Positions 8,336-63,101 of a stretch of DNA of 64,000 nt are shown here, one piece after another. The position numbers were made by a program, and so were the translations under genes. Positions within the stretch are counted from its first letter, which is position 1. Every line of letters begins with the position of its first letter. Source of the stretch: Heterodontus francisci (lineage: Eukaryota). The notes under the pieces are model-generated. The model was not told the origin of the DNA, ran no database searches, and saw only the letters and a list, made by a program, of their open reading frames with translations. Location of the stretch: positions 1,550,001 through 1,614,000 of the forward strand of contig NW_027140807.1 of the NCBI RefSeq assembly GCF_036365525.1, in the 5' to 3' direction.

Positions 8336-8354
8336 CTCCCGTTCATCCGCTGCA

Positions 8355-8393
8355 GGTTTTTGCAGCTGCGGATCCGCTTTCTCAAACACTGTG
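8355..8393 (-). other. 23-RSS of V3
   Basis: CACAGTG-23-GCAAAAACC. Confidence 0.92.
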
Positions 8394-8687: not shown

Positions 8688-8835
8688 CTGTGGAATGGAA
8701 CATCGATTAGATTATTATTTCAGTCAATAATGGATTGGAGCAGGAGCTGCATTGCAAGAAAGAAAGGGCTTACATTAATATAGCGCCGTTCAGGACCTCC
8801 GGACATCAGAAAGTGCTTTGCAACAAATGCAGTTA

Positions 8836-9045
8836 CTCCGTCAGTACTGCCTATTCGACAGTGCAGCACTCCCTCAGTACTGCCTCTGCGACAGTGCAGC
8901 AGTCCCTCAGTACTGCCTCTGCGACAGTGCAGAACTCACTTAGTACTGCCTCTGCGACAGTGCAGCACTCCCTCAGTACTGCCTCTGTGACAGTGCAGCA
9001 CTCCCTCAGTACTGCCTCTGCGACAGTGCAGCACTCCCTCAGTCC
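8836..9045. repeat. 33-bp tandem repeat (~6 units) in the V3 intron remnant
   Basis: (CAGTACTGCCTCTGCGACAGTGCAGCACTCCCT)n. Confidence 0.9.
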
Positions 9046-10109: not shown

Positions 10110-10148
10110 GGTTTTTGCAGCTGCTGATCCGCTTTCTCAAACACTGTG
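10110..10148 (-). other. 23-RSS of V4
   Basis: CACAGTG-23-GCAAAAACC. Confidence 0.92.
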
Positions 10149-37414: not shown

Positions 37415-38229
37415 CTCCCTGGCTGCACAGTAATACACCGCCGCATCCGCAGCCTTAACCTTGAGGACCCTCAGGCTGCATCGTTTGTCCTCGGGCCTTA
37501 TAATCTTCACCTCCTCTTCAAATTTTCCTTCGTACGTGGGTGAGCTTCCAGTGAAAGAATAGCCCATTAGGGTGAGCCCCTGCCCGGCATACTGCCGATA
37601 CCACAGCATAACGCTCTTACTACTGTCATTCTGGTAACAGTTTAATTCTGCTGGTTCACCTCCCTTCACTGCCACCAGAGTTGGCCACTGGTGTATCACC
37701 TCTGCTAGAGTTTTGCCTTGAGAAATAAGGAGAATAGTTTTAAAAGTTTGGAACATATTGTGACATATGATAACCAACTAAACGATCCAAATAGATAATT
37801 AGATAATACTAGATAACTATATAGGCAGACAATATATAGTTAAATGATATATTTGTAGATATATAGATAATAAACAGATAGATATAGAGATTGAAAAATA
37901 ATGTAGCAAGTGAAATGAGACAGACAAATTAACCCAGATTTAGGGCAAACTTATCGGTTAAAGATAGCTGTAGTAGAGTCACGAATATATAAGTTACTTT
38001 CATTCAGTCAACAATTTCATTAAGTAAATATTATTTACAGTGAAAGTAAAGTATGTAGTTTAAGAAATGACAGAAAATCGACTGCAATGATGTTTTATCA
38101 ATCTAGTTTGATAGAAGTTAGCAGTGAATGAAAGCACAGCATGTATTTTAGCACAGGTATCTTTATGAACGATGAATACCTACATGGAAGAAGAGAACAG
38201 ACGATTAGGAAGAGTTTGGCAAACTGCAT
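37415..38229 (-). CDS. TRBV: V13: TRBV (family F, single copy here), apparently functional
   Basis: Leader 38184-38229 (MQFAKLFLIVCSLLP); V exon 37415-37716 EVIHQWP..NCYQ..WYRQ..YYCAARE. Confidence 0.9.
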
Positions 38230-39437: not shown

Positions 39438-40065
39438 CTGACTCCAGGCACAGTAATACACGGCTGATTGATTCTCCCACAAGCTGGAGGACTCCAGGTA
39501 AAAATGGGTGTTGTCGGGCTTTCTGGCAGTGAAACCGTCCACCTCACCGGAGGGGTTGACCGTTCCAGCAGTGTAGGAATAGAAAAGGTTCTCGGGCTCA
39601 CGGTCCGGATGCCACCGGTACCAGTAGAAAGCAGAGCTAGCATCTGCCTTTGTGTAAACGCACTGGATCCTGACTGGAGAGCCCGGGGAATGGGATATGG
39701 AAGCAGGAGTCTGTTGGATCAACACGGCCCCCACATCTGTAATACAGAGAGAGAGAGAGAAAGAGAGAGATAAAACCAGGGATAATGTCTATATTGGTAA
39801 CAACAAGAAGAGGTAGACTTGGGCAGACACAGAAAGAGAGAGAGAGAGCGGAAGGGACCAGTTAAAAATAGAGACACAGAGATAAAGGCAGAGAGAGAGA
39901 GAGAGAATGAGAGACAGATAAAGAATTATAGAGGGAGAAGGAGAGAGACAGAGACAGACAGAGACTGAGAAGCAGAGACACATGTACATCATTGTAACCT
40001 CACTGTTCAGACACCTCCTTACCCGTTAACACCAACAACACAACCCAGAGCTGAGAGACAGCCAT
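39438..40065 (-). CDS. TRBV: V14: TRBV (family A), apparently functional
   Basis: Leader 40023-40065; V exon 39438-39736 VLIQQTP..QC..WYRW..YYCAWSQ. Confidence 0.9.
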
Positions 40066-43000
40066 CTCTGGAGGGTAACGGATCCGTGTGGTTTTATATG
40101 AAGTGACTGAGCACTTTTATTGTAGAGTATCTCAAAGTTCTGGGCACTGACTGAAAGTCACAGCTTTCCTCTCCATCACTTTATCATTCAGATAGGCGGG
40201 ACCCAGTTTTCTTTCATTTCCGGGGAGGGACCAATGTTAGACTCCTGGTAATCGCTTTCTGGAACTGCAGTTCTGTGTCATTGACATCTGCAGCCCGATC
40301 ATTCGGAGCTCTCTCCAAATATGTGCACCTAGTACTCCAGGTGTGTTCTCTCCAAGACCCAATACAAGTGTAATACGACTTCCTTATTCTTGTACTCCCA
40401 TCCCCCATGAAACAAAGACCAACATGCCTGTAATTCAACAGAAGCACTTCATTGGCTGTAGAACTCCTTGGGAAGTTCCAGATCGGCTTTCCAACTTTCT
40501 CCCCTCTTTCAGATACTGACGTTGACTATATAGAATTGCAGACAATATAGAACACAGCATCAGGTGAACGGATCTATACAGGTGTTGATGTTCCACAGAT
40601 ACATCCTTTCATCCCTCTTTATCTCATCCTCTCAGCATCTCCTGTCAGTCCTTTCTGCCTCGTATGTCTACTGGTTTCCCACTGAATACTATTTACCGCC
40701 ACCACTGCCTGTGGTGGTGAGTTCCCCATTCTCACCAATCTCTGGGGAATGAAGTTTGTCCTGAATTCACGTTTGGATTTTTAGTGAGTATCTTATGCCT
40801 TATAATTCTGGTCTTTAGCCTCAAGTGAAAATATCTTCTCTACGTCTATCCTATCAAACCTATTAATAATATTAAAGACTTCTTATCTGGGCACCCCTCA
40901 TTTCCAGAGAAGGACCCCAGCCTGTTCGATCTTTACTGCTATGTATATTTTACCGTGATCTAAATGTGGTCTAACCAATGTATATAGACGCCAGAACTGT
41001 GCATAGTGCTCCAGTTGTGATCTAACCAATGTATAATGAGAGCAGAACAGTGCACAGTTCTCCAAATGAAGTCGAACCAAGGTATGAGGAAACCTGAAAT
41101 GTTGACAGTGCACCCAGTGTGTTTTAACCAAGGAGGTTGGAGACCAAAAATGTGCAAATTCCAATTTTGGAACCCAGGTTCTTGATGATAAAACTGTGGA
41201 TGAGGCACTGCTCTTTGAGTTCTTGGGAAAATTACGTGAGTTTGAAGTCAGTCTGTGTGTGGTTCTTTGTCTCGACAGTGGATAACTCTGAACTGCTTTG
41301 TCCCGTCAGTCACTGCTCATAAATACACCTCCACATTGACCTTACCTTGGAGAACCGACAGTCGACACCTCAAAGCACAGGAGAAGTAACACCAGAGGTG
41401 CCTCCGCATTATCCTCCAACTCCAGTGGCAAGACAGGTGGTCCAACAGCATCGTCCTCTCCCAAACCAACCTGCCTCGTGTCAGGGCGCGAAACACCCCA
41501 CACCAGCTCCACTGGCTGGGACATGTCATTCACATTCCTGCCACCAGACTCCCCAAAGCAACTGTTCTACTCAGAACTTGGTCGTGGCAGGAGACTCCCA
41601 GGAGGATAGCGGAAAGGCTTTAGAGGTGTCCTCACAGCATCCCTGGAGAGATGAAACATCCCCGTCGATTCCTTGGAGACCCAGGCTCCTGACCATCCCA
41701 GACGGAGGAAGGACAAACGGGAAGGCATCGGACACCACGAGGAACTTCAGGAACATGCAGAGGTAAGGCTGAGGCATCGGAGGGAGCGCACAAACCTGCA
41801 AACTACTCACCTACCTGATCCGACAAGCACCACCTGCCCCTCATGTGACAGCGTCTGCAGATCATACACTGGACTCATCAGCCATCTCAGAACCCATTGA
41901 ACCGGAGTGGAAGCAAGTCATTCTCAATCCCGGGGAATTGCCTAAGAAGGTGAACTCTCTCCAGCTTCCTTGTTAATTTATTATTTTGCACTGATCTGCA
42001 AAAGCAAACATGCTCTTAAAACCTCAACATACTGAGTTTCACCTCCTCAATGAACAGACCTGATTAATACAGCCCCTCCACCGGCGGATTGTGGATATCA
42101 CAACATGTCAGTGTGAAGCCTTCTGTTCTGAAAACTGTCTCTCACTTAATCACATGAAGTGAGCACCAGATCTCCCGTTATTCCACCTGGAAACAGGGAG
42201 CATGGGGGGGGGGGGAGGTGGGAATGTTACTTTGCACTTGGCACGATAGATGTGGGAGTTGTGCTAAAGTCACGATGGACATTCAGGCTCTCTCCTAGTT
42301 TCCTACAAACACCTGGGGGAAAGTAATTGTAAAATAGAACCTGGAAATCTACAAACTGGCATCTGGGTGCAAATATTTCAAAGTTGGACAGATATTAATG
42401 TCACTTAATGCCCCCATAACGATCAGATTAAAGGCTCAATCTACCTTATATCAAATCATTGACTTTTTTCCATTGTCGGAATATTTTGTGTGAAATAGTT
42501 GAGAGGTGAAACATTTCAGAAGCAGCCAAGTTGACCTGTGGAGCTGTTGCGGGTAAAGCTCACTCTGAGCATGTTCTCGGCAGCGGCTGCAGTGGAGTAA
42601 CACTGGCACCTAGTGGCTCCAGGTGTAACTGCAAGCACCGATTCTGCAGGCGTTTCAGTGTCAGACCCTGAACCTGTTTCAGTCATTAGTTATATTCTCC
42701 TACTTGACTCGTGTTGGTGCTTGTGGTGCAGAACTAGATGGAAGCTAATGCACAGATCCGCGCCATTCGACCTGACAGCTCCCTGCTTCACTCCAGCCTC
42801 AACCAGTCAAATATATTTTGAAGTGCAGTCACTGTTGTAATGTAGGGAAGGAGGCAGACAAGCTGCAAGATCAAGTGCAGGGTTATTCAGAAAGAACAGG
42901 GAGTGGGAGTAATTGGACAGGGAAGTGAATACCAGGGATCATAATTGGAAGATAGTCCTTTATAAAACCAATTGGGAATTCAGGAGGAGGTTCTTTAACC

Positions 43001-44028
43001 CAGGGAGCGGTGAGAATGTGGAATTAGCGACCAATGGAATGGGTTGAGGTCGAATAGAGACGATGCAGTTAAGGGGGGAGCTGAATAAATACATGAGTGA
43101 GAAAGGAATAGAAGAATCTGTTGATAGGGGAAGATGAAGAGAGATGGGAGGAGGTCGCTCTTTCGAACAGCCAGGCCAGGATCGATGGGCTGAATGGCCT
43201 GGATTTGTCATGCATGATTCTTTGATCCAATAAGACCCGTCAACCTGCTGCCTTGTTTCAGGGCCAAGACAGTTTCATTCCACCCACCCCCCCCCCCCCC
43301 CCCCACCCCCCCACCCCCCTTCTGCTAAACGGGAGTTAAAGGGTTAAGTTGTTCACCACACTGAACTCCAGTCATTGTGAAAATTTTTCAAAAGACCCCG
43401 AGAGACTGAGAGACAAGTGGGTTAACAGTTTTGAACAGATGCTGAAGCCGCCGTCTGGAGGCAGGTGTTCCAGTCAGATACGGATCTGGAGAGGTGTCTC
43501 GCCTTTGCACTGTATGAATCATCAGAGACATGATTAAAGGTTCCAAGATCAACCATTTCCAATTTGTATGGACTTGTGTCCATTAGAGTAATGAGGGTAA
43601 GGGGAGATTTGAAAGACGTGGTCAGAAGTGTCTTGATGGAGAAACTGTATCCAGAGGGTAGTATCTACTGTCAGGAGGGTCGATAAACCAGGGACCAAGA
43701 ATTGAAGGTAATTGGGAAAGGAACCAGAGTGTGAGATGAGTGGAATCTTTCTCCTCAGTGAATTGTTATCATGTGGAGGGCACTGACTGAAAGGGCGGTG
43801 GAAGACCATCCAATAGTAACTTCCAGATGTCAATTGGAGAAGTAGATGAAGGGGAGATTTATTAATGTAATGGAGAACTAGTCAGTGAATGGGAACGAGT
43901 TAGACAACTCCGTCAAAGAGCCAGTTCATTCAACAGTAGACATAAAAACTGACAGATAGTCAGAGTGATAGAATGACAGCCCAGATAAACAGGTCTATCT
44001 CCCACAAGTGAGCTCTGTCAATGTTTAG

Positions 44029-44067
44029 AGTTTTTGCTGAACTCCGGCGCCTTTCTGAGTCACTGTG
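44029..44067 (-). other. 23-RSS of V15
   Basis: CACAGTG-23-GCAAAAACT. Confidence 0.92.
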
Positions 44068-44683
44068 CAGACTACAGGCACAGTAATACACGGCTGATTG
44101 ATTCACCCACAGGCTCAAGGACTCCAGGTAAAAATGGGTGTTGTCGGGTCTCCTGGCGGTGAAACCGTCCACCTCTCCGGAGGGGGTGACCGTTCTGGCG
44201 GGGTAGGAATAGAAAAGGTTCTCGGGCTCACGGTCCAGTTGCCATCGGTACCAGTAGAAAACGGAGCCTGCTGTTGCTTCAGTGTAAATACACTCGATCC
44301 TGACTGGAGAACCTGGGGAATGGGATAAGGAAGAGGGAGTCTGTTGGATCAACACGGCCCCCACATCTGCAAAACAGAGAGGGAGAGAGAGAGAGAAAGA
44401 GAGAGATTAACCCAGGGACAATCTCTATATCGTTATCAACAAGAAGAGGTAGAAGTGGGCAGACAGAGAGAGAGCGGTGGGGACCAGTTAGAGTCAGAGA
44501 TAAAGGCAGAGAGAGAGAGAGAGAATGAGAGACAGAGAAAGAAATATGGAGGGAGAAGGAGAGAGACAAAGACAGACAGAGACTGAGAAGCAGAGGCACA
44601 TGTACATCATTGTAACCTCACAGTTCAGACACCTCCTTACCCGTTAACACCAACAACACAATCCAGAGCTGAGACACAGACAT
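44068..44683 (-). CDS. TRBV: V15: TRBV (family A), intact; duplicate of V2
   Basis: Leader 44641-44683 (MSVSQLWIVLLVLT); V exon 44068-44366 open to YYCACSL. Confidence 0.9.
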
Positions 44684-46874
44684 CTCTGGAGGGTGAAGGA
44701 TCCGTGTGGTTTTATATGAAACGACTGAGCACTTTTATTGTAGAGTATCTCAAAGTTTTGGGCACTGACTAGAATTTACAGCTTCCGTCTCCATCATCTT
44801 CAACATTTTCCTAGGCGGAGCCAAGCTTTCTTTCTTTGTTCATGGGCTCCCCGAGGACTCGTCATTTCTGGGGAGGGACCAATGTTTGGCCCCCAACTCA
44901 TCGGTTTCTGGGCCTGCAGTTCTGTTTCATGTCTTTGAAAGTTGCAGAAAGGAAGGGAGTAAATGTGATGTAAACTATCTTCTGTGGTGGAGAGGTGATT
45001 AAATGGGCGGGTGTGTTGGGATCATCAATACCTTCAGTACTCCCCTGATCATAACCACATTCATCCTGACACCATCCTCACACTTATCATTACCATCTGA
45101 GGACACATTATCACCCTCGTCCCGACCGCCAGTATCTGTGACAACCTCACCCTCAGCAGCCTCATCACCATAAAGAGATTCTCACTCCACCATCATTATC
45201 AAGCTTGTTCTCTTCCAATTGTATCTGAATGTATTCAGTGATGGGATGTGTGCATTGCTGGGAGGGTCATTTCAGAAAAGCTGAGATTTTACAAGAGTAA
45301 ATGTTCACTATCTTTCTTAAATATCTATCAGGACTCGGTAACAATGGAAGTGTTAAAGGTTAGACCAAGAGTGGGGGGTGACAACTTAACTATTCCATAG
45401 ATGCACTTTACATGAAGTGGGAAGATCATGGATGAAATGGGAAACATTCCAAAGTGTGTGGATTGGATAAGCAGTGGCAGGTTCCATCATCGCTCCCCTA
45501 ACCTTCTGGATTGGGCTCTGGGACTTTTTGTAAAATTGTCTGTTCCAATGAACAGCTTCTCCCACATCTCCACATCGCTGAAATCCCTCACGCCCGGTCA
45601 TCTACTCTTAAATCTCCTTTGCACCCTCTCCATCCTTCCTACAATGTCATGTACAGAAGTGGACACGCTACACCAGTTGCGGCCAAACCAGACTTTTTAT
45701 AAATGGTTTAGCATCAATTTGTGGCGTTTGTGCTGCATTCAAAATTGTGTGCGTTAATTCTGCTTAATCAGGGAAAATAGTATGAAACATGCATTTCGGT
45801 ACGACATTTTTGCTCGGTGGATTTGTTTTGACTTACCTGCAGTTTTTTGGCACTAAAGTGTCAGCCTTTTCATTGTCTCCAGTCTGTGGAGTGGGTCCTT
45901 CTAACTCAGAGAGGAGAGTTCTATCCACTCAGGCAGCGCACGTTGAGTCTTGAGTACCTCACCTCCTGACTCCCCAAAGCCTGTCCACCATCTATAAGGT
46001 ACAAGTCAGGAGTGTGTTGGAATACTCTCCACTCGATTGCAGCTCCAACAACACTGAAGAAGGTCGACACTATCCAGGACAAAACAGCCCGCTTGATTGG
46101 CACCCTATCCACAAACATTCACTCCCTCCACCACAAACGCACTGTGGTAGCACTGTGGACTATATACAAAATGCACTGCAGCAACTCCCAAAGGCTCCTT
46201 CGACAACACCTTCCAAACCCGCGACCTCTGCCACCTAGAAGGACAAGGACAGCAGATGCATGGGAACATCACCACCTGCAGGTTCCCCTTCAAGCCACAT
46301 GCCATCCTGACTTGGAACTATATCGCCGTTCCTTCACTGTCGCTGGGTCAAAATCCTGGAACTCCCTTCCTAACAGGACTGTGGGTGGACCTACCCCACA
46401 TGGACTGCAGTGGTTCAAGAAGGCAGCTCACCACCACCTTCCCAAGGGCAATTTGGGATGGATAGCAGTTGCTGGACTGGTCAGCGATGCTCACATCCCA
46501 TTCAAGAATTTTTATAAATATTAAATGAATAGAAACTGCTTCTATAGGTAGAAGGCAACCAGGAGACATTGATTAAATGTAACTGGCAGATGAATTAGTG
46601 GGGGGAGGGGGGAGATGTGATGATTTATTTAAGCAGCGAGTTGTTATGATGTGGCTAGCACTTTCTGAAAGGGTGTTGGAAGCACTTTGAACAAGAACGT
46701 TCAAAAGGCAATGGATTGTACACGTGAATGGAATCAATGTGCACGGCGATGGGGAAGTAGAAGGGGGGAAGAACTGGACAGTTCTTTCAAATAAGCCAGT
46801 ACGGGGGAGATGGGCCGAATGGTCTCCTTCTGTGCTGTTATCCAAGATGATTCATTGATCTGGTTCCAGTAAAT

Positions 46875-47057
46875 GAGCAGTCACTCTACTACCGCCCCTT
46901 GCCGGTGGATGATGAGCAGTGAGATTCAATCTACTGCTGCCCCCTGCTGGTGAATGATGAGCACTGAGTTCCAATCTACTGCTGCCCCCTGCCGGTGGAT
47001 GATGAGCAGTGAGATTCAATCTACTGCTGCCCCCTGCCGGTGGATGATGAGCACTGA
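46875..47057 (-). repeat. Same 45-bp minisatellite, 4 units
   Basis: Paralogous position, directly downstream of the V16 RSS. Confidence 0.9.
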
Positions 47058-47077
47058 ACTCCCGTTCATCCGCTGCA

Positions 47078-47116
47078 GGATTTTGCAGCTGCGAATCCGC
47101 TTTCTCAAGCACTGTG
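47078..47116 (-). other. 23-RSS of V16 (variant nonamer)
   Basis: CACAGTG-23-GCAAAATCC. Confidence 0.88.
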
Positions 47117-47786
47117 CGATACTACAAGTGCAGAAATAGACAGCGGTGTGAGATGGAGCGGCGTCTCTCAGTGCCAAAGTAATCAGTGTATTGCTGGCTC
47201 TGACTGCCTTAAATGACTCGGACGTGTAATTAGTGACAGACCCTTCTGTAGCAGAATGGAACAGAGCTTCCAGTGCCCTGTCTGGTTGTTGTCTGTACCA
47301 GTACATATAGTAATATGCAGTATTGGTCAGCGTGCATCTGAGTGTTGTCGACTCTCCTGCAGCAATCGATAGGATCGAGGGTGTCTGTTCCACATAGGAG
47401 GCGAGTATTCCTGTGGAATGGAACATCGATTAAATTATTATTTCAGTCAATAATGGATTGGAGCAGGGGCTGCATTACAAGAATGAGAGGGCTTACATTA
47501 ATATAGCACCGTTCAGGACCTCAGGGCATCAGAAAGGGCTTTGCAACCAATGTAGTTACTCCCTCAGTGCTGCCTCTGCGACAGTGCAGCACTCCCTCAG
47601 TCCTGACATCTGGGTTGTCAGCCTTGACTTTGAGCTCAAGTGTTCTGGAGTGAGACTCAGACACAGCAGTGTTATGGAACAGAATCACCGCTGACATTAC
47701 AATACATTATTCTACACAGTTTCTGACATTGACTTACGTGGGAACAGGGCAGGCATCAAGATTAGACAGAGAACTTCATGCAACAT
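47117..47786 (-). CDS. TRBV: V16: TRBV (family B), intact; duplicate of V3
   Basis: Leader 47738-47786 (MLHEVLCLILMPALFP); V exon 47117-47410 to YFCTCSI. Confidence 0.9.
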
Positions 47787-49162
47787 GATTTCTTCATTCG
47801 ATACTAACTCGATGTGTGAACGTGTGGAGTTTTCAACAACACACTTGCAGGCGGTTTCTATATTGTATCCAATTAAATACCCAGCATCCGGTTGTCATTG
47901 TGATTGGCAGTCACTTACTGCGACACTCTGCTCCACCCCATTACATTGTATAGCAATGTTGTAGAATGAGACAACACAAGGGGATAGGGGGAGATTGAAT
48001 AGAGGTGTTCACATTTCAGAAAGGGATTTGATAGAGTAGAATTCAGGGAAACACCCCTCTATACCCAGAGAGTGTGCCCATCCCTTATTGCCCCTGAGAA
48101 GGTGATGGTGAACCATCTTCGGGAATACCTGCTGGGCCATATCAGAGGGCAGTTAACAGTCAACCACATTGCTGTGGGTCTGCAGTCACATATAGGCCAG
48201 ACCGGGTAGGAATGGCGGATTTCCTTCCCTGAAGGTAATCAATGAAGACGTTGGGTTTTTAAGACACTCCATGTTCAGTATTACTCATACTTTCCATTCT
48301 AGATTTTTATTTATTTAATTAATTGAATTTAAATTGCATTTCTGCCCCGGTGGGAATTGAACTCAAGTCTGGGAATCATTAGTCCAGGCCTCTGGATTAC
48401 TAGCCCAGTAACATAACTGCCCTGCTGCCAAACCTCCGTGGTGAATGGGAGTTAAAGGGTTAAATTGTTCACTGGTCTGAACTGCCAGTTTATTTGAAGA
48501 ACACATCAAATATGACTGGAGTCTGAGATGAATGTTGGTAAACAGTTTTCAGCAGCTTCTGAACTCGCTTTCAGGAGGCAGGTGTCCCAGAGATGAAGTT
48601 ATCTGGAGAGGGGTCTCGCCTTTGAACCGTGTGAAACAGCGCTCAGATGGTTAATGGTTCTGCGCTGAGTTAGTTCCTGTGCATGAGGGGGTTGTTCGCC
48701 TCTGTGTAGTGAAGTTTAGAGGGAGATTAACCAGACTGGTATCAGGGATGAGGGACTTCAGTTACTGTGGAGAGACTGGAGAAGCTGGGGGTTTCTGCCC
48801 TTAGAGCAGAGAAGGTTAATGGTAGATGTGATACAGATATTGAAGATCATAGAGGATTTTGATAGATAATTGATGACAAATCACATCTTCTACTGGTCAA
48901 TATATAGAAAATCTATGAAAAGATGGTCATTCATTACATTATTGCAGTATGTTTAATTAGTTCATACAAACTGTAATTACCTAAAGATAGAGTTAGATAG
49001 ATAGAGAGACAGAGAGATAGATAACCAGGTAAAGAGATAGATAGATAGAGAGACAGAGAGATAAACAATCAGGTGGACAGATAGATATGAACAGAAAGCT
49101 TCAATCTACTGCTGCCCCCTGCCAGTTGAAGATGAGCACTGAACTCCCGTTCATCCGCTGCA

Positions 49163-49201
49163 GGTTTTTGCAGCTGCGGATCCGCTTTCTCAAACACTGT
49201 G
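49163..49201 (-). other. 23-RSS of V17
   Basis: CACAGTG-23-GCAAAAACC. Confidence 0.92.
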
Positions 49202-49937
49202 TGATACTACAAGCGCAGAAATAGACAGCGGTGTGAGATGGAGCGGCGTCTCTCAGTGCCAAAGTAAACAGTGTATTGCTGGCTCTGTCTGCCTTAAATG
49301 ACTCGGACGTGTAATTGGTAACAGACCCTGTTCCAGCAGAATAGAACAGAGCTTCCAGTGCCCTGTCTGGTTGTTGTCTGTACCAGTACATTGTAGGATA
49401 GGCAGTATTGGTCAGCGTGCATCTGAGTGTTGTCGACTCTCCTGCGGAAATCGATAGGATAGAGGGTGACTGTTCCACATAGGAGGCGAGTATTCCTGTG
49501 GGACGGAACATCGATTAGATTATTATTTCAGTCAATAATGGATTGGAGCAGAGGCTGCATTACAAGAAAGAGAGGGCTTACATTAATATATCGCCGTTCA
49601 GGACCTCAGGGCATCAGAAAGGGCTTTGCAACCAATGTAGTTACTCCCTCAGTACTGCCTCTGCGACAGTGCAGCACTCCCTCAGTACTGCCTCTGCGAC
49701 AGTGCAGCACACCCTCAGTACTGCCTCTGTGACAGTCCAGCACTCCCACAGCCCTGACACCTGGGGTGTTAGTTTTGACTTTGAGCTCAAGTGTTCTGGC
49801 GTGAGACTCTGACACAGCAGTGTTATGGAACAGAATCACCGCTGACATTACAATACATTATTCGACACAGTTTCTGACTTTGACTTACGTGGGAAGAGTG
49901 CAGCCATCAAGATTAGACTGAGAACTTCATGCAACAT
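49202..49937 (-). CDS. TRBV: V17: TRBV (family B), intact; duplicate of V4
   Basis: Leader 49889-49937; V exon 49202-49495 to YFCACSI. Confidence 0.9.
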
Positions 49938-51990
49938 GATTTCTTCATTCGATACTAACTCGATGTGTGAACGTGTGGAGTTTTCAACAACACACTTGCA
50001 GGCGGTTTCTATATTGTATCCAATTAAATACCCAGCATCCGGTTGTCATTGTGATTGGCAGTCACTTACTGCGACACTCTGCTCCACCCCATTACTTTAC
50101 ATAGCAATGTTGTAGAATGATACAACACAGGAGGATAGGGGGAGATTGAATAGAGGTGTTCACATTTCAGAAAGGGATTTGATAGAGTAGAATTCAGGGA
50201 AACAACCCTCTGTACCCAAAGAGTGTGCCCATCCCTTATTGCCCTTGAGAAGGTGGTGGTGAACCATCTTCGGGAATGCCTGCTGGGCAGTTAATAGTCA
50301 ACAACATTGCTGTTGGTCTGGAGGCACATATAGGCCAGACCGGGTAAGAACGGCATATTTCACTATGTTCACTATGGAGAAGGATGATGTAGGTGTAGAT
50401 ATCGGGGAGGGGGGTTGTGATATACTTGAACATATTAGCTTTTAAAGGGAGGAGCATTAGCTGTTTTAGCAGTCTTAAAAGTGGATAAGACCGCAGCCCG
50501 GATGAGACATATCCCAGGCTGTTATGTGAGGCAAGGGAGGAGATTTCAGGGCCTCTGACACAAATTTTCAATTCCCCTCTGGCCACAGGAGTGGTCTCAG
50601 AGGACTGGAGGACAGCGAATGTTGTACCATTATTCAAGAAGGACACTTGTGCTCTTCTGAGCTCGCTGTCAGGAGGCAGGTGTCCCAGAGATGAAGTTAT
50701 CTGGAGAGGGATCTCGCCTTTGAACAGTGTGAAACAGCGCTCAGATGGTTAAGGGTTCCGAGCTGAGTTAGTTCCTGTTCATTGGGGGGTTGTTCGACTC
50801 TGTGTAGTGAAAGTTAGAGGGAGATTAACCAGACTGGTACCAGGGATGAGGGAGTTCAATTACTGTGGAGAGACTGGAGAAGCTGGGGGTTTCTCTCCTG
50901 AGAGCAGAGAAGGTTAATGGTAGATGTGATACAGATATTGAAGATGATAAAAGATTTTGATAGATAATTGATGACAAACCACATCATCTACTGGTCAATG
51001 TATAGAAAATCCTGGAAAAGACGGTCATTCATTATATTGGTGCAGCATGTTTAATTAGTTCATACAAAGTGTAATCACCCAAAGATAGAGTTGGATAGAT
51101 AGAGAGACAGAGAGATAGATCACCAGGTAGAGAGATAGATTGATATCGAGAGAGGTAGAGAAATAGAGAGTTGGAGGGAAAGTCAGACAGGTAGAGAAAT
51201 AGCGAGCTACAAAGAGAGACAGTCACTGCCCCAGTAAAAGACAGGAATGTTAATTCGCATTCTACCATTTTACGCCAGCTTTGCAGCCAGTGGTAGAGTG
51301 GGGAATAGAGAGAGAGGGAGCGAGAGAGATGGAGAGAGTGGGATGGAGAGAGAGGGATGGAGACAGAGGGATGGTTAGAGAGGAATGGAGAGAGAGGGAT
51401 GGAGAGAGAGGGATGGAGCGAGAGGGATGGAGAGAGGGAGCGACAGAAAGTTATTGATAAGTCACGAACTCATTGAAGGGCGGAGTGTTTTCGAGGTGAA
51501 GAATGTTCTCCTTGTGTTCCCAGGTCACTGTTAAAGTGTGTTCCAGACTCTGATGTTTACCAGGGTCCTACAGCGCACTCTGCTGTCCCTTTGGAGAAAG
51601 AGAACGCAGTGAAATAAAACCACACCGTATCCATCTATCTGTCTATCTGACTGTCTGTCTGTCTGTCTGTTTTTATCTGATCTTCATTCCAGATATTAAA
51701 ATCTTTAATAATCTCTCTTAGACCGCTTAAAGTTTACTCTTGTCTTCTCCTTTCTGGAGAAATAATCCCCCGATGTTCAAACTTTCTTGATAACTTTAAC
51801 CTCTGTGTTCTGATATCATTCCTGTAAAGTCTATTTCACAATTCCCCTGTGTTTCAATATCTAACCACTCAATTTCTATTTAAATCCGCCCTGTCTTCTT
51901 GTGAAAAACATGTTCCCAATGATAAAAACACCCAACAGGACGCAGCACCGCCTGGTTTTATCTGAAACAGGTATTTCCTGCTGCCTTTGG

Positions 51991-52018
51991 GGTTTTTCTT
52001 GAACTCTGAGTCACTGTG
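51991..52018 (-). other. 12-bp-spacer RSS of V18
   Basis: CACAGTG-ACTCAGAGTTCA(12)-AGAAAAACC. Confidence 0.9.
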
Positions 52019-52474
52019 AAGACTCCAGGCACAGAAATACACGGCCGAGTGATTCTCCCACAGGCTGGAGGACTCCAGGTTGAACTCGTACTCATTCGGT
52101 CTCTCGGCGGTGAAACCATCCACCGTCCCCTCTGGATCCACATAGTTAGCAATACTGGAGTAAAACATCAACAGCGGCTCCTTCCCCGGCTCTTGTCTGT
52201 ACCAGTACATGTTGAAGTTACTGCGGCTCCCCTTCACAGTGCACCTCAGTTCCACTCCTTTCCCGGGAAATCTGGAGACAGCGGCGGGAGTCTGGCTGAT
52301 AGTCTGTGAGTTCACATCTGGGAGAGAGATGGAGAGAGGAGGAGATCAGTAAACAGGGAGCATCTGGGAATGAAAGGGAGACAGGGAGAGGAGAGGAAGG
52401 TTATTAACGATAATCTTTGCATTTCACACTCACATACAATGAAACAGGATTATCAGACACAGTAACTGATACAT
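52019..52474 (-). CDS. TRBV: V18: TRBV (family C), intact ORF carrying a 12-spacer RSS; duplicate of V5
   Basis: Leader 52438-52474 (GTATGT donor); V exon 52019-52317 open to YFCAWSL. Confidence 0.9.
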
Positions 52475-53525
52475 CTTTCACTTCAACTTGTTCTCTTGAT
52501 AGACACAGGAGTGAGAGCAGGAGCTTAGAGTCTTGTGAAGGTCCAAATCCACTCTTTACAAATCATTGGGAGGAACATGAAGAGCATTAGGAAGTGATAC
52601 AATGTTGGAGACGCCCATTCCCCCAGGTCAACAAATCAGAATTGTATTATCTGCCAATCTGCTTCTCTCTCTCTCTCTCTCTCTCTCTGTCCCCCTCTCT
52701 ATCTCAGTCTCTCTGTCCCCCTCTCTCTCTCTCAGTCTCTCTGTCTCACTCTCACTGTCTCAGTCTCTCTATCCCCCTCTCTGTCTCAGGCTCTCTCTCT
52801 CTCACTCTCTCTGTTTCAGTCTCTCTGTCCGCCTCTCTCTCTCAGTCGATCTGTTTCAGTCTCTCTGACCCCTCTCTGTCTCAGTANNNNNNNNNNNNNN
52901 NNNNNNNNNNNNNNNNNNNNNNNNNNNNNNNNNNNNNNNNNNNNNNNNNNNNNNNNNNNNNNNNNNNNNNNNNNNNNNNNNNNNNNNNNNNNNNNNNNNN
53001 NNNNNNNNNNNNNNNNNTTCAGTCTGTTGTCTCTGTCAGTTTTCCTCTAAATCTCGTTCTGACCCTCTCTCACACACTCGGTCTCCCTTTCTTTGTCTCT
53101 CTCACTGTGTGTGTGTATATACCTCTCTAAGGTGATGAATGTCCTTCTCCTGTCCATGTGTATGATGCTGGAGGGCTGGATGACCTCTGCCTCTTCCTGT
53201 TTTCCTATTAAATGTTTTACAGGCCATTGTGTATTCATGGTCCTAGAGCACCCTCAGTTAACCATATAGAGGAAGAAAACTCAGTGTCAGTGCAGTAAAA
53301 CTCAAGTCGTTTTATAGTTAATTCTTCCTGATAGTTACACCTCAGATCTGGTGTTATCCTTGTTAATTGTTCTTTGCACATTCTCTACTACCTGTATATC
53401 TAATCTCTCACTACCACTCAAACCCATCTCTTCTTGTTATCATGAACACTTTCTCTCTGCAAAACGAAAGAAGTTCGAGGCTCCGAGCAGTTTTATCCTC
53501 CACAGGTGTTTCCTGCTGCCTTTAG

Positions 53526-53564
53526 GGTTTTTGTTGAACTGCTCCATCTCTCTGAGTCACTGTG
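53526..53564 (-). other. 23-RSS of V19
   Basis: CACAGTG-23-ACAAAAACC. Confidence 0.95.
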
Positions 53565-54049
53565 AAGACTCCAGGCACAGAAATACACGGCCGAGTGATT
53601 CTCCCGCAGGCTGGAGGACTCCAGATTGAACTCGGAGTCTGTCGGTCTCTCGGCGGTGAAACCCTCCACCGTCCCCTCTGAGTTCTCCCTTTGTGCAGTT
53701 AGGGAGTGAAACATCAGCTGCGGCTCCTTCCCCGGGTATTGTCTGTACCAGTACATGTAAGGGTTACTGGTGCCATCCACGGTGCATTTCAGCTTCACCT
53801 GCTCCTCAGAAAATTTGGAGACAGAGGCGGGAGTCTGGTGGATGGTCTGTGAGTTCACATCTGGGAAAGAGACAGGGAGAGGAGGAGATCAATAAACAGG
53901 GAAATTCAGTCCAGTGGGGAGAGAGAAAGAGAGAGAAGAAGAGAACGAAATAAATAAAACCATATCCTAAAGAAATGTTAAGTAGAATTATTGTTTCAAT
54001 AAAATTCCTTACGGTGAAACAGGGTGATCAGAGTCAGCAACAGATACAT
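53565..54049 (-). CDS. TRBV: V19: TRBV (family C), intact; duplicate of V6
   Basis: Leader 54013-54049; V exon 53565-53860 open. Confidence 0.92.
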
Positions 54050-55845
54050 CTTTTACTTTAAGCTGCCTTCTGAATCTGTAAAGGGGAGAGAGCAGGAGTG
54101 ATGAGTGTTGTTAATAACCAACCCACTCTTTACAAATCATTGGGAGGAACAGGGAGAGCATTAGGAAGTGATGCAGAGATGGTGACGTTCATTTCCCACA
54201 TCAACAAATGAGAATCGAGTTGGTTGCCAATGACCCACTTTCTCTCTCTCTCTCTGTCTCTCCCTGTCCTTTACTTGTGATGCTCCTTTCTTCCTCTCTG
54301 TCTCTCTTCTGTGCCTCCCTATATGTCTCAGTCTGTTTATTTCAGTCTCTCTCTCACNNNNNNNNNNNNNNNNNNNNNNNNNNNNNNNNNNNNNNNNNNN
54401 NNNNNNNNNNNNNNNNNNNNNNNNNNNNNNNNNNNNNNNNNNNNNNNNNNNNNNNNNNNNNNNNNNNNNNNNNNNNNNNNNNNNNNNNNNNNNNNNNNNN
54501 NNNNNNNNNNNNNCCTTCTCCTGGTCATGGATATCAACCTGGAGGACTGTATGATCTCCCACTGTTTCAGTTTTCCTGTGAACTCCTTCTCAAAAGCCAT
54601 TGTACATCACATGGTCCTGGAGCGTCCTCAGCTGTCCCTGCGGTGAAAACATACACAGTGTCAGTCTATAACAGCCCCAGTCCTTTTATTGTTATTCATT
54701 CCTGATAGTTACAATCCTGAGATCACGGGATATTCTTATTCAATGAGCTGGAAGATGAATGGGCACGGATACAAAGCTGTGCATGTGTGTGCGTGTGTTT
54801 TTCACTCGCTCTGTCTTTAGTTAACTGTCTCCCTCTGTTTTACTGCTTGCTGTCTTTCTCTCCCTGTTTCATTCTGTGTGTGTGTGTGTCTGTCTCCCAA
54901 TCTGTCTCACTCTCTTCCTCTGTGTTTTTTTTGCTTTTCTCTCGCACTTCCTTCTTCCCCCTCTCTGTCCTCCTCTCTCTCCTCTGTCTGTCTCTCTGTC
55001 TCAGTCGCTTTCCCTCAGTCGCTTTCTCTCTGTCTCTCTCTCAGTCTCTCTCTCTCTGTCTCTGTCTCTCTCTCTCTCTGTCTCTCTCTCACTCTCTGTC
55101 TCTCTCTGTCTCTCAGTCTCTCTCTCTCAGTCTCCCTCACTGTTTCTCTGTCTCAGTCTCTCTGTCTCAGTCTCTTCCTCTGTGTTTTTTGTTCTCCCTC
55201 TCTCTCTTTCTTGTTCCCCCTCTCTGTCCTCCTCGCTCTCCTCTCTCTTCTCCTGTCTGTCTCAATCTCTCTTTCTCAGTCTCTCTCTCTCAGTCTCTCT
55301 CAGTCTCTCTCTGTCTCAGTCCCAGTCTCTCTGTCTCAGTCTCTCTGTCTCTGTCAGTTTTCCTCTCAATCTTGTTCTATCCCTCTCTCACACACTCGGT
55401 CTCCCTCTCTTTGTCTCTCTCGTTGAGTGCGTGTGTATCCCTCTCAAAGGTGATGAATGTGCTTCTCCTGTCAATGTGTATGAAGCTCGAGGGCTGTATG
55501 ATCTCTGCCTCTTTCTGTTTTCCTATTAAATGTTTGCCAGGCCATTGTGTATTCATGGTCCTAGAGCACCCTCTGTTAACCCTACAGAGGAGGACAACTC
55601 AGTGTCAATGCAGAAGAACTCAAGTCGTTTTTGTAGTTGATATTTCCTGATAGTTAGAACCTCAGATCTGGTGTTATCCTTGTCAATTGTTCTTTGCACA
55701 TTCTCTACTACCTGTATATCTAATCTCTCACTACCACTCTGACCCATCTCTTCTTGTTATCATAAACACTTTCGCTCTGCAAAACGAAAGAAATTCGAGG
55801 CTTCGGGCAGTTTTACCCTCCACAGGTGTTTCCTGCTGCCTTTGG

Positions 55846-55884
55846 GGTTTTTGTTGAACTGCTCCAACTCTCTGAGTCACTGTG
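55846..55884 (-). other. 23-RSS of V20
   Basis: CACAGTG-23-ACAAAAACC. Confidence 0.95.
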
Positions 55885-56359
55885 ATCTCTCCAGGCACAG
55901 AAATACACGGCCGAGTGATTCTCCCGCAGGCTGGAGGGCTCCAGATTGAACTGGGAGCTAGTCGGTCTCTCGGCGGTGAAACCGTCCACCGCCTTCTCCG
56001 GATTTATGTGATCAGTACCTGTGGAGTAAAACATAAACTGTGGCTCCTTCCCCGGGTATTGTCTGTACCAGAACATGTCAGGGTTACTGCTGCCCTGCAC
56101 GGTGCATTTCAACTTCACCTGCTCCTCAGAAAATTTGGAGACAGCGGCGGGAGTCTGGTGGATATTCTATGAGTTCACATCTGGGAAAGAGACAGGGAGA
56201 GGAGGAGATCAGTAAACAGGAAAATTCAGTCCAGTGGGGAGAGAGAAAGAGAGAAATAAATAAATAAAAACATCACCTAAAGAAATGTTAAGTAGAATTA
56301 TTGTTTCAATAAAATGCCTTACGGTGAAACAGGGTGATCAGAGTCAGTAACAGATACAT
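55885..56359 (-). pseudogene. TRBV: V20: TRBV pseudogene (family C), early TAG; duplicate of V7
   Basis: Leader 56323-56359; V exon 55885-56180; GTG AAC TCA TAG (stop at 56167-56169) instead of CAG. Confidence 0.88.
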
Positions 56360-58121
56360 CATTTACTTTAAGCTGCCTTCTGAATCAGCAAAGGGGAGAG
56401 AGCAGGAGTGATGAGTGTTGTCAATAACCAACCCACTCTTTACAAATCATTGGGAGGAACAGGAAGAGCATTAGGAAGTGATGCAGAGATGGTGACGCCC
56501 AGGTAAACAAGTCAGAGTGGAGTAGGTTGACAATGTCTCTCTCTCTCTATCTGCATACATCCAGCTTTATGTCTACAACTCTTTCACTCTCTTTCTCTCT
56601 CTGTATCTGTGTGTGTTTGTGTGTGTGTGCATCTTTCTGTCTCTGTCTCCCTCTGTCCCGTTCATTTCCACTGAGCTTTTCCTCACGACGTCTCCCTGAT
56701 TCACCTTCTCTGTCTCTGTGTTTCATCACCGGATTGATTGAGAACCAGAGGTCACTTATTGATGGTAATTGGCAGAAGATCCAAAGGTGAACTGAGGAAA
56801 CCTTTTGACACAGTGAATGGTTAGGATCTGGAATGCACTACCTGAGAGTGCGGGGGAGGCAGTTTCAATCGTCGCTTTCAAAAGGAAATTTGAATAATTA
56901 TGTGTAAGGAAAAATGTGCAGTGTTATGTAGAAAGGGCAGGGGGAGTGGGACTAGCTGCAGAGACCAAGTACAGCAACAGGCTAACAGCATTGTGGAACA
57001 TCCTGCATTCAGGCTGCAAGTGTGACCCTGAGATTCTGGTTAGCGGATACTTTTAATTCTCATTCCCACTCCCACCTCTCTGTACTCGACCTCCTTCTCT
57101 GCTCCAGTGAAGTTCAACAGAAACTCGAAGAAAAGCACATCATCTTTCAATTGGATACTTTGCAGCTTTCTGGGCTCAACAGTGAGTTAAACAATTTCTG
57201 ATCGTAACAACTGCTCCGGTTTATATGGGCAGAGGTTTGTTGGTAATAATTGTGTTTCTGCTACTTTCACCTCCTCTAGACCCATCTCTTGTTCTTTACT
57301 TGACCCATTAACTTCCCCTTTGTCTTGCACCAGCCTCAGTTTTGTTATTAAATCTCTCCTGCATTCCTCCCATTCTCCCTCTCCCTGGCTTTCTGCTGCT
57401 TAAAAGCTGATAGATCACTAAATCCTTCCAGTTCTGTTGAAAGGTCTACGACCTGATATGTTAATGTTTTGTCTCTCTCCACAGAGGCTGTCTGACCTGA
57501 TTAGTATTTCCATCCTTATTTATTTATAACCCAGAAACACAATGAGCTCCAAGACAGTGACAGAGCGCCCAGAACCGAAACCATCCAGCATCTGCGGTAC
57601 CTTGTGTTCAGTTCACCAGACTGTAACCGGGATGTAGTTCTATAATTATCAGGAGAGGTTCATAGACATGTTTCAAAGTCCCTATTGAAACATCATCAAT
57701 AATCTGATACTTATCACGGTCCTACACCGCCCTCTGCTGTCGCTGTGGATAAAGACAACATTGTCAGTGAATAAAACACAACTTTGTCTGTCTGCCTACG
57801 AGCTATCTATCGACCTATCTCCCTACCTATCTGATCTTCACTTCACACATTAAACCCTTTTATAATCTTTCTAAGAACTATGAATGTTCACCCTTCAGTC
57901 TTCTCCTTTCTGGAGCAAAGATGTTCAAACTATCTTTGTTCCGATATCATTATTGTGAAGTCTATTTCACAATTCCCCTGTGCTTCTATTTCTAACCTCT
58001 CACTTTCTGTTTAAATCCGCCCTGTCTTCTTGTGAAAAACACTTTTCCAATGCCAAAAACAACTAACAGGACGCAGCACCGCCTGGTTTTATCTGAAACA
58101 GGTGTTTCCTGCTGCCTTTGG

Positions 58122-58610
58122 GGTTTTTGTTGAACTGCTCCATCTCTCACTGTGAAGACTCCAGGCACAGAAATACACGGCCGAGTGATTCTCACGCAGG
58201 CTGGAGGACTCCAGTTTGAACTCGTACTTATTAATTTTCTCGGCGGTAAAACCTTTCCCCGTCCCCTCTGGATCCACATAGTTAGCAAAACTGGAGTAAA
58301 ACATCAACAGCGGCTCCTTCCCCGGGTGTTGTCTGTATCAGTACATGGAGATGCTACTGCTGCTCCCCTTGACAGTGCACATCAGTTCTACTCCTTTCCC
58401 GGGAAATCTGGAGACAGCGGTGGGAGTCTGGTGGATAGTCTGTCAGTTCACATCTGGGACAGAGATGGACAGAGGAGGAGATCAGTAAACAGGGAATTTC
58501 TGGGAATGAAAGGGAGACAGGGAGAGGAGAGGAAGGTTATTAACGATAATCTTTGTATTTCATGCTCACTTACAGTGAAACAGGATTATCAGACCCATTA
58601 ACAGATACAT
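58122..58610 (-). pseudogene. TRBV: V21: TRBV pseudogene (family C): two stops, 17-bp RSS spacer, truncated promoter
   Basis: Leader 58574-58610; V exon 58155-58453; TGA at 58443-58445 and 58338-58340; RSS CACAGTG-17-ACAAAAACC at 58122-58154. Confidence 0.9.
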
Positions 58611-62620: not shown

Positions 62621-63101
62621 GGTTTTTATTGAACTGTTCCAATTCTCTGAGTCAGTGTGAAGTCTCCAGGCTCAGAAATACACGGCCGAGTGATTCTCCC
62701 GCAGGCTGGAGGTCTCCAGATTGAACTGGGAGTCAGTCGGTCTCTCGGCGGTGAAACCGCCCACTGTCCCCTCTGGATCCACATAGTTAACAGTACTGGA
62801 GTAAAACATCAACAGCGGCTCCTTCCCCGGGTATTGTCTGTACCAGTACATGGAGAGGTTACTGCTGCTCCCCTCCACGGTGCACCTCAGTTCCACTCAT
62901 TTCTCGGGAAACCTGGAGACTGCGGCGGGAGTCTGGTGGATAGTCTGTGAGTTGACATCTGGGAGAGAGATGGAGAGAGGAGGAGATCAGTAAACAGGGA
63001 ACTTCTGGGAATGGAAGGGAGACAGGGAGAAGACAGGAAGGTTCTGAAGGATAATCTTTGTATCCTTGAACCAGGATTATCAGAGCCAGGAACAGATACA
63101 T
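62621..63101 (-). pseudogene. TRBV: V23: TRBV pseudogene (family C)
   Basis: V exon 62660-62958 with TGA at 62897-62899 and second Cys to TGA at 62672-62674; leader ending at 63101 has lost its GT donor; RSS CACACTG-23-ATAAAAACC at 62621-62659. Confidence 0.9.

What the first reader, a model, noticed from the sequence alone, without database searches (positions are those of the whole stretch)
51991..52018. Intact V-beta gene whose 23-RSS has become an exact 12-RSS
Seen: V18 has an intact leader, splice sites and ORF. Its RSS reads CACAGTG-ACTCAGAGTTCA-AGAAAAACC, a 12-nt spacer. Its duplicate V5 has a 23-nt spacer (+ strand tgaact[gctccatcgct]ctgagt), so an 11-bp deletion at a CT microhomology removed about one helical turn. 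V18 also has the consensus heptamer, whereas V5 has CACACTG. Established: TRB is V-23 / 12-D-23 / 12-J and RAG obeys the 12/23 rule. Inference: V18 can no longer join the D 5' RSS or J. It becomes a legal partner for the 23-RSSs of neighbouring V genes (inversional V-V joins that would flip parts of the cluster) and for the D 3' 23-RSS (V joined to inverted D). In trans it could pair with 23-RSS J segments such as IgH JH. It may be a dead gene, a RAG decoy or rearrangement hotspot, or a new joining route. The nonamer variant (AGAAAAACC) may weaken it.
Basis: partly seen in the sequence, partly recalled or inferred. Interest (0 to 1): 0.85.

Follow-up and report, generated by a model that had tools for sequence, protein, structure and literature searches.

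The report
Shark V-beta gene with shortened RSS
One otherwise intact T-cell-receptor beta V gene of a shark has lost 11 bases from its recombination signal, so the signal now has the wrong spacer class (12 instead of 23); it is most likely a stranded, unusable V gene in a decaying gene subfamily, not a new recombination device.

Summary
A minus-strand V gene (leader 52474-52438, intron, V exon 52317-52019) ends in CACAGTG, the 12-nt spacer ACTCAGAGTTCA and AGAAAAACC (52018-51991). Its paralog at 13038-13076, 97.8% identical over the 3.2-kb block, has a 23-nt spacer. The difference is one clean 11-bp deletion flanked by a 2-bp microhomology.

Context argues for ordinary decay. The window is a co-oriented array of 22 V segments containing a ~39-kb tandem segmental duplication. 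V18 belongs to a five-member subfamily, and every member deviates from the canonical form: two have stop codons (one also has a 17-nt spacer), one has a dead AACAGTG heptamer, V5 has CACACTG, and V18 has the 12-nt spacer. The V5/V18 exons differ by 7 nonsynonymous and 0 synonymous changes. The neighbouring canonical pair shows 2 and 6.

By the 12/23 rule V18 cannot join the 5' D-beta 12-RSS, so it fits the IMGT 'ORF' class. I found no evidence of V-V or V-D inversions and no signal-joint relics.

The public read data were only short contigs confounded by paralogs. They neither confirm nor refute the deletion, and they do not show whether V18 is used.

Another first-stage note of this scan (s1-872159, unchecked) reports a V RSS elsewhere in this genome shortened to an 11-nt spacer.

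The parts
52438..52474 (-). V18 leader exon (L-part1), ATG at 52474-52472, 37 nt, encodes MYQLLCLIILFH plus the first base of the split codon
   Evidence: Sequence. The exon end at 52438 matches the splice joint 52317->52438 seen in contigs of run X5. The joint cannot be assigned to V18 rather than V5.
52318..52437 (-). Leader intron, 120 nt, GT..AG. The donor is GTATGT in V18 and GTAAGT in V5.
   Evidence: Alignment; joint ('skips 120', ends CT..AC on the + strand).
52019..52317 (-). V18 V exon, open frame ending ...AVYFCAWSL
   Evidence: Translation; Pfam V-set E = 3.4e-13.
52012..52018 (-). Heptamer CACAGTG (consensus). Together with the first spacer bases it spells TGACTCA.
52000..52011 (-). 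12-nt spacer ACTCAGAGTTCA, the remnant of the family's 23-nt spacer after an 11-bp deletion
51991..51999 (-). Nonamer AGAAAAACC (8 of 9 matches; position 2 is C>G, a change shared with V5)
13038..13076 (-). RSS of the paralog V5: CACACTG, the 23-nt spacer ACTCAGAGCGATGGAGCAGTTCA, and AGAAAAACC
13077..13375 (-). V exon of the paralog V5. It is intact and differs from V18 by 7 nt, all nonsynonymous.
49643..52886 (.). Duplicated block holding V18. It is 97.8% identical by blastn to 10689-13942, which holds V5. It is part of a ~39-kb tandem segmental duplication (1-18800 and 39778-57791).
   Evidence: blastn. The MAFFT alignment of the block gives 1.76% mismatches and only 3 indels.
58122..58154 (-). 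RSS of the subfamily member V58155, which has two stop codons: CACAGTG, a 17-nt spacer (6-bp deletion), ACAAAAACC
20005..20043 (-). RSS of the subfamily member V20044, which has an intact ORF: heptamer AACAGTG (the critical first C is lost), 23-nt spacer, ACAAAAACC
62621..62659 (-). RSS of the subfamily member V62660, which has two stop codons: CACACTG, 23-nt spacer, ATAAAAACC

Best explanation
V18 is a recent tandem duplicate of a shark TCR-beta V gene. An 11-bp deletion between two AG dinucleotides shortened its 23-RSS spacer; this looks like replication slippage or microhomology-mediated end joining.

Shown: the coding part, leader, splice sites and upstream region are intact.

Inferred from the 12/23 rule: the signal is now in the same spacer class as the 5' D-beta and J-beta signals. 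RAG therefore cannot pair V18 with a D-J-beta joint, and V18 drops out of the productive repertoire. This makes it an 'ORF'-class V gene in IMGT terms: an open reading frame with a defective recombination signal.

Inferred: the exact length of 12 is a coincidence of one deletion among several RSS lesions in a subfamily under relaxed constraint. Any RAG activity on it would be a rare, non-productive by-product. Such activity would take the form of inversions with co-oriented V 23-RSSs or with the 3' D-beta 23-RSS.
For: 1. The deletion is a derived state. The closest paralog V5 and the other family-A members have 23-nt spacers of the same sequence, apart from pseudogene V58155 with 17 nt.
2. Every member of subfamily A1 deviates from the canonical form (tree):
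   - V62660 has stop codons and CACACTG.
   - V58155 has stop codons and a 17-nt spacer.
   - V20044 has AACAGTG.
   - V5 has CACACTG.
   - V18 has the 12-nt spacer.
3. The V5/V18 exons differ by 0 synonymous and 7 nonsynonymous changes. The adjacent canonical pair V14617/V53565 shows 6 and 2. Fisher p = 0.007, or p = 0.033 against three pooled canonical pairs. Exon divergence is 2.3% against 1.76% for the whole block, so there is no sign of purifying selection.
4. V18 has no alternative nonamer at 22-24 nt spacing.
5. All 22 V segments are co-oriented and there are no signal-joint relics.
6. Published annotation practice defines the IMGT ORF class as an open frame with an RS defect (PMC10464911).
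7. Another first-stage note of this scan reports a V RSS in this genome shortened to 11 nt (s1-872159). I did not check it.
Against: 1. The ORF, leader, splice sites and upstream region are all intact. The heptamer is consensus and the five 'critical' RSS positions are kept. A 12-RSS that RAG can cut is therefore plausible, and some aberrant joining cannot be excluded.
2. Only 3 indels occur in the 3.2-kb duplicated block. One of them lies in the 23-nt spacer and has exactly the length that switches spacer class. This is a low-probability coincidence for a single locus, though expected somewhere among the many V genes this scan reads.
3. Zero synonymous against seven nonsynonymous changes could also reflect diversifying selection on a gene that is used.
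4. I obtained no read-level or repertoire evidence that V18 is unused.
Confidence: 0.7

Rival explanations
1. The 12-RSS is a working RAG target that pairs with 23-RSSs in cis. With neighbouring co-oriented V 23-RSSs it would give inversional V-V joins. With the 3' D-beta 23-RSS it would invert about 0.5 Mb and join V18 to an inverted D. V18 would then act as a decoy or hotspot that wastes or rearranges alleles in thymocytes. Sharks are known to rearrange Ig genes in germ cells (my own knowledge, not tested here), so such events might also occur in the germline.
For: The heptamer is consensus, the spacer is exactly 12 nt, and the nonamer keeps its A-tract. The first two spacer bases, AC, fall in neither the best nor the worst quartile for 12-RSS use (PMC9723617). 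The V family is transcribed in a probable lymphoid RNA run that also contains a V-(N/D)-J junction contig. The nearest 23-RSSs lie 1.5 kb upstream and 2.8 kb downstream.
Against: No such product was seen. All V segments are still co-oriented and no signal-joint relics exist in the window. Spacer sequence can change 12-RSS activity by up to two orders of magnitude, and an RSS with all critical residues can be inactive (PMC212687). In mammals V-beta 23-RSSs pair poorly with most 12-RSSs (the beyond-12/23 restriction) and RAG loads mainly at D-J recombination centres; both points come from my own knowledge and were not tested here. V18 lies about 0.5 Mb from D-J-C according to earlier notes.
Confidence: 0.15
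2. The 12-nt spacer is not a fixed feature of the species. It could be an assembly error, or a private or rare allele of the assembled haplotype.
For: In the best DNA-holding runs (X1, X3) no listed contig bridges the deletion junction, and the only loose ends at 52004/52005 carry 23-type spacer sequence. These runs never show the window's letter at 51973, 52234 or 52498. Their share of the stretch's 31-mers is 0.54-0.58, which matches the 0.56 already shared with paralogs in the window. They therefore come from a different haplotype or individual.
Against: The deletion is a clean 11-bp gap in non-repetitive sequence, inside a block that otherwise aligns with only two tiny indels over 3.2 kb. 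That is not a typical assembly error. Most laid contigs were not displayed and a filter removes some records, so absence from the listing proves nothing. A rare allele would still be a real 12-RSS V gene.
Confidence: 0.08
3. V18 uses its 12-RSS in a new productive route, joining to some 23-RSS-flanked D or J element in this or another locus.
For: Only the intact ORF and the canonical look of the 12-RSS.
Against: No 23-RSS-flanked J or suitable D is known in TCR-beta, and none is in the window. Joining to the 3' D-beta 23-RSS would leave an inverted D followed by a 12-RSS that cannot reach J-beta 12-RSSs (geometric inference). The subfamily shows decay, not conservation.
Confidence: 0.03

Closest known systems
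IMGT 'ORF' functionality class of germline V genes (open reading frame with a defect in the recombination signal or splice sites)
   Same: Intact leader, splice sites and V exon with the conserved Cys, Trp and Cys, but a non-canonical V-RS. It is expected not to rearrange normally. The definition is as quoted in PMC10464911.
   Different: The defect is not a degraded heptamer or nonamer, or an off-by-a-few spacer. It is a spacer that lands exactly on the other legal length. I found no paper in the held library describing a TRBV with an exact 12-RSS.
Canonical TRBV gene segments with a 23-RSS (V-23 / 12-D-23 / 12-J organisation)
   Same: Gene structure, V-set domain and CAWS-type 3' end match. 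So do the family-typical heptamer and flanking spacer bases (including the TGACTCA motif) and the nonamer. It lies in a co-oriented V array with D-J-C downstream, according to earlier notes.
   Different: The spacer is 12 nt, not 23 nt, so the defining pairing with the 5' D-beta 12-RSS is forbidden by the 12/23 rule.
Natural 12-RSSs (J-beta, 5' D-beta, V-kappa)
   Same: CAC heptamer core with the R/Y pattern CACNRYR, a 12-nt spacer, and a nonamer with A at positions 5 and 6.
   Different: The spacer sequence is a fusion of the two ends of a 23-type spacer and was not shaped by selection as a 12-RSS. Activity is untested. Mouse J-beta 2.6 shows that such a signal can be inert (PMC212687).

Membership tests
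Germline TCR-beta V gene segment (TRBV) | [quoted passage not shown] | tested here: met
   The splice joint 52317->52438 appears in RNA-type contigs, though these are family-level and not V18-specific.
Germline TCR-beta V gene segment (TRBV) | A 3' recombination signal with a 23 +/- 1 nt spacer | tested here: not met
   The spacer is 12 nt. There is no alternative nonamer at 22-24 nt.
Germline TCR-beta V gene segment (TRBV) | Lies in the TRB locus upstream of, and co-oriented with, D-J-C beta | not testable with these tools
   Only the 64-kb window can be read. Earlier unchecked notes place a TCR-beta D-J-C about 0.5 Mb below the window start, which is downstream for these minus-strand V genes. 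The best named protein hits are V-set proteins of the bamboo shark. PDB hits include TCR beta chains but also antibody V domains.
IMGT ORF-class V gene | Open reading frame without stop codon or frameshift | tested here: met
IMGT ORF-class V gene | A defect in the recombination signal (or splice sites, or conserved residues) | tested here: met
   12-nt spacer where the locus requires 23 nt. Definition from PMC10464911.
IMGT ORF-class V gene | Not found, or only rarely found, in rearranged transcripts | tested here: inconclusive
   The contigs of the probable RNA run X5 are 60-160 nt and cannot separate V18 from V5 and other paralogs. The one V-(N/D)-J loose end at 52020 cannot be assigned to a gene.
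Functional 12-RSS | Heptamer CAC core, 12 +/- 1 nt spacer, nonamer with conserved positions 5 and 6 | tested here: met
   CACAGTG, 12 nt, AGAAAAACC. The critical positions are those named in PMC212687.
Functional 12-RSS | RAG1/2 cleaves it when paired with a 23-RSS | not testable with these tools
   This needs a recombination substrate assay or junction sequencing. A RIC12 score could not be computed because the model tables are not available here.

The most novel reading that the evidence does not exclude
V18 is a natural one-step 23-to-12 switch of RSS class on an intact V gene, and the new 12-RSS is RAG-competent. It would then produce measurable V-V or V-to-3'D inversions in shark thymocytes, and possibly in germ cells. 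That would make it a natural probe of beyond-12/23 restrictions and a living example of how the 12/23 layout of an antigen-receptor locus can flip during evolution.
Probability: 0.12. Interest if true: 0.6.

Novelty: new member of a known kind. Interest (0 to 1): 0.3.

Why it matters
If the ordinary reading is right, this matters mainly for annotation. The gene should be labelled ORF (non-rearranging) rather than functional, and repertoire pipelines for this shark should not expect it in productive rearrangements.

It also shows that RSS spacers in this expanding and contracting V array decay by small microhomology deletions. The window holds spacers of 17 and 12 nt, and an unchecked note reports one of 11 nt elsewhere.

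If the 12-RSS proved active, it would be a rare natural substrate for two questions. One is what limits 12/23-legal but unwanted joins inside a V cluster. The other is whether a single deletion of one helical turn can change a segment's recombination partners.

Tried and rejected
1. Read support. The look-up of sequencing runs and read laying gave only Logan contigs of 60-120 nt.
   - Depth is summed over many paralogs.
   - No displayed contig bridges the deletion junction.
   - The DNA runs differ from the window at 51973, 52234 and 52498.
   - The result therefore neither confirms nor refutes the deletion or the use of V18.
2. k-mer check. 56% of the stretch's 31-mers are shared with paralogs in the window. 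The 0.54-0.58 word share of the best runs is therefore not evidence that they hold this exact copy.
3. Cross-species or cDNA evidence through proteins.
   - The search for homologous proteins found only two bamboo-shark V-set proteins, at 64% and 45% identity.
   - No close ortholog and no rearranged chain was found. Only candidates of 55-175 aa were visible, so full-length beta chains were out of reach.
4. Germline traces of RAG action. Heptamer-to-heptamer fusions were scanned with up to 2 mismatches. The three hits lack the CAC core on one side and have no flanking nonamers, and two of them are copies of each other. Rejected.
5. Hidden 23-RSS. No nonamer lies at 22-24 nt spacing. Rejected.
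6. The idea that V18's consensus heptamer is a newly 'improved' signal. Parsimony on the subfamily makes it the retained ancestral state.
7. Kappa-type V gene (a V with a native 12-RSS). Rejected, because V18 is a 97.8% duplicate of a V with a 23-RSS.
8. RIC scoring. Not possible, because only the formula outline appears in the papers read, not the probability tables.
9. Literature search for a described TRBV with an exact 12-RSS. None was found in six searches; this is absence of evidence only.
Exons were used by reference only.

Full report
**What is there.** On the minus strand of the window lies a complete germline V gene.
- Leader exon: 52474-52438, encoding MYQLLCLIILFH plus the first base of a split codon.
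- Intron: 120 nt, phase 1, 52437-52318, with donor GTATGT and acceptor cag.
- V exon: 52317-52019, 299 nt, ending ...NHSAVYFCAWSL.
- Recombination signal: CACAGTG / ACTCAGAGTTCA / AGAAAAACC at 52018-51991.

The exon product matches Pfam V-set (E = 3e-13). The spacer is exactly 12 nt. A 12-RSS pattern with up to three mismatches occurs only here in the 64 kb. V18 has no replacement nonamer at 22-24 nt spacing.

**Where it sits.** The window is a dense array of 22 V segments, all on the minus strand. It contains a ~39-kb tandem segmental duplication: 1-18800 matches 39778-57791 at 94-98% identity.
- V18 lies in block 49643-52886. Its counterpart V5 lies in block 10689-13942.
- The two blocks are 97.8% identical by blastn. 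The MAFFT alignment gives 1.76% mismatches and only three indels.
- V5 carries CACACTG / ACTCAGAGCGATGGAGCAGTTCA / AGAAAAACC, with a 23-nt spacer.
- The pairwise alignment shows one 11-bp gap in V18's spacer, bounded by an AG (CT on the + strand) microhomology, plus the G/C difference in the heptamer.
- Every other family-A member has a 23-nt spacer of the same sequence type, except pseudogene V58155. The deletion is therefore the derived state.

Earlier notes of this scan, which I did not check, say the genome is a shark and that a TCR-beta D-J-C region lies about 0.5 Mb below the window start. That is downstream for these V genes. The only named protein relatives are V-set proteins of the bamboo shark at 64% and 45% identity.

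**Context that decides the reading.** A maximum-likelihood tree of the ten family-A units splits them into two well-supported groups. V18 and V5 are sisters in group A1 with V62660, V58155 and V20044. Every member of A1 deviates from the canonical form:
- V62660: two stop codons, CACACTG, ATAAAAACC.
- V58155: two stop codons and a 17-nt spacer (6-bp deletion).
- V20044: intact ORF but heptamer AACAGTG. The first three heptamer bases are among the five positions whose mutation essentially abolishes recombination (PMC212687).
- V5: CACACTG and AGAAAAACC. This is only mildly suboptimal, since a purine at heptamer position 5 is preferred about 2-fold (PMC9723617).
- V18: the 12-nt spacer.

Spacer-length lesions are thus not unique to V18. 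Another first-stage note reports a V RSS in this genome shortened to 11 nt (s1-872159, unchecked).

By parsimony V18's CACAGTG is the retained ancestral heptamer and V5's C is its own change. The AGAAAAACC nonamer is a shared derived state.

**Selection.** The V5 and V18 exons differ at 7 nucleotides, all nonsynonymous (pN 0.030, pS 0).
- The adjacent duplicated pair with canonical RSSs and intact ORFs, V14617/V53565, shows 6 synonymous and 2 nonsynonymous differences.
- Fisher p = 0.007 for that comparison, and p = 0.033 against three pooled canonical pairs.
- Exon divergence of 2.3% is no lower than the block's 1.76%.
- By outgroup comparison both lineages took amino-acid changes (translations).
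- This fits relaxed constraint. Diversifying selection cannot be excluded on seven changes.

**Mechanism.** Established knowledge:
- RAG pairs a 12-RSS with a 23-RSS only.
- TCR-beta is organised as V-23 / 12-D-23 / 12-J.

Inference for V18:
- It cannot synapse with the 5' D-beta 12-RSS of a DJ joint, or with J-beta 12-RSSs. It is excluded from productive V-to-DJ joining.
- That is the IMGT 'ORF' category: an open frame with a defective RS (PMC10464911).
- Legal partners would be co-oriented 23-RSSs. The nearest lie 1.5 kb upstream and 2.8 kb downstream. The 3' D-beta 23-RSS is another.
- Because these signals point the same way, joining would be inversional.
- A join to the 3' D-beta signal would leave V18 fused to an inverted D followed by a 12-RSS that cannot reach J-beta. 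That is a dead end.

Nothing in the window shows that such events have happened. All V segments keep one orientation. The only heptamer-to-heptamer near-matches lack a CAC core on one side and have no nonamers.

Whether the signal is active at all is open.
- The first two spacer bases (AC) fall in neither the best nor the worst quartile for 12-RSS use (PMC9723617).
- Spacer sequence can shift activity about 100-fold.
- The mouse J-beta 2.6 RSS is inert despite having all the critical residues (PMC212687).

**Reads.** Laying X1, X3, X5 and X7 gave only contigs of 60-160 nt with depth summed over paralogs.
- Among the displayed pieces none bridges 52004/52005.
- The loose ends there (GCTCCATCT...) are 23-type spacers of paralogs.
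- X1 and X3 never show the window's base at 51973, 52234 or 52498.
- 56% of the stretch's 31-mers are already shared with paralogs inside the window.
- These runs therefore come from a different haplotype or individual and cannot test the deletion.

Run X5 shows two things.
- The leader-V splice joint 52317->52438 is present.
- One contig leaves the V exon at 52020 and continues in frame into a J-like sequence, reading CAWSL-RPNSGNQYYF if the shown letters abut the junction.
- This suggests lymphoid RNA with rearranged beta chains of this V family. The CAWSL end is shared by at least six V genes in the window, so the contig cannot be assigned to V18.

**Verdict.** The feature is real in the assembly and correctly described. 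Its most likely meaning is ordinary: a recently duplicated V gene, stranded by a small deletion in its RSS, in a subfamily that is losing recombination competence.
- That the deletion lands exactly on 12 nt is a low-probability coincidence. A natural 23-to-12 class switch on an intact V gene is not something I could find described (six literature searches).
- No evidence makes it a device rather than a lesion.
- I rate it a new member of a known kind (ORF-class V gene with an RS defect), interest 0.3.
- I give about 12% chance that the 12-RSS is active enough to matter, in which case it would merit about 0.6.

Noticed in passing
window 1-18800 and 39778-57791: A ~39-kb tandem segmental duplication of the V array at 94-98% identity copies at least seven V genes in order. 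The N runs at 13943-14073 and 52887-53017 are both 131 nt long and sit at the same relative place in the two copies. They were left untouched.
   Followed up: partly
window 58122-58454 (minus strand): Pseudogene V58155 has two stop codons. Its RSS lost the first 6 spacer bases, leaving a 17-nt spacer with a perfect heptamer and nonamer. This is a second spacer-length lesion in the same subfamily.
   Followed up: partly
window 20005-20340 (minus strand): V20044 has an intact V exon, but its heptamer is AACAGTG (the critical first C is lost), with a normal 23-nt spacer and nonamer. It is another ORF-class candidate. It lies next to the N run at 19315-19707.
   Followed up: partly
window 24989-25291, 32147-32449, 37415-37696, 26807-27107 (minus strand): Four V segments from other families are interleaved with the CAW-type V genes. 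Two are near-identical copies ending CAAGDG with heptamer CACAGCG. One ends CAARE with CACAGCG. One ends CVTTEG with CACAATG. All have 23-nt spacers. Their 3' ends look more like alpha/delta-type V genes than beta-type.
   Followed up: no
window 52012-52020 and run X5: A contig of the probable RNA run X5 leaves the V exon one base before its end and continues into a J-like sequence. It reads in frame as CAWSL-RPNSGNQYYF. This indicates rearranged beta transcripts of this V family in that library, and it cannot be assigned to one V gene.
   Followed up: partly
window 51973, 52234, 52498: The best DNA-holding public runs (X1, X3) never show the window's base at these three positions. They do match V18-specific bases elsewhere, for example 51739-51814 and 52189-52257. 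This suggests haplotype or individual polymorphism, or mosaic alleles, in this V array.
   Followed up: partly
window 52006-52012 and the same place in most family-A RSSs: TGACTCA (AP-1 consensus) spans the heptamer/spacer junction and is retained in V18's shortened RSS. Other first-stage notes have already flagged this motif. One follow-up in this genome judged that there was no evidence for an AP-1/Fos role.
   Followed up: no
window 51300-51440 and 52650-52700: GA-rich degenerate minisatellites (units such as GGGATGGAGAGAGA) flank the V18 unit on both sides. They are possible substrates for the unequal crossing-over that expands and contracts the array.
   Followed up: no
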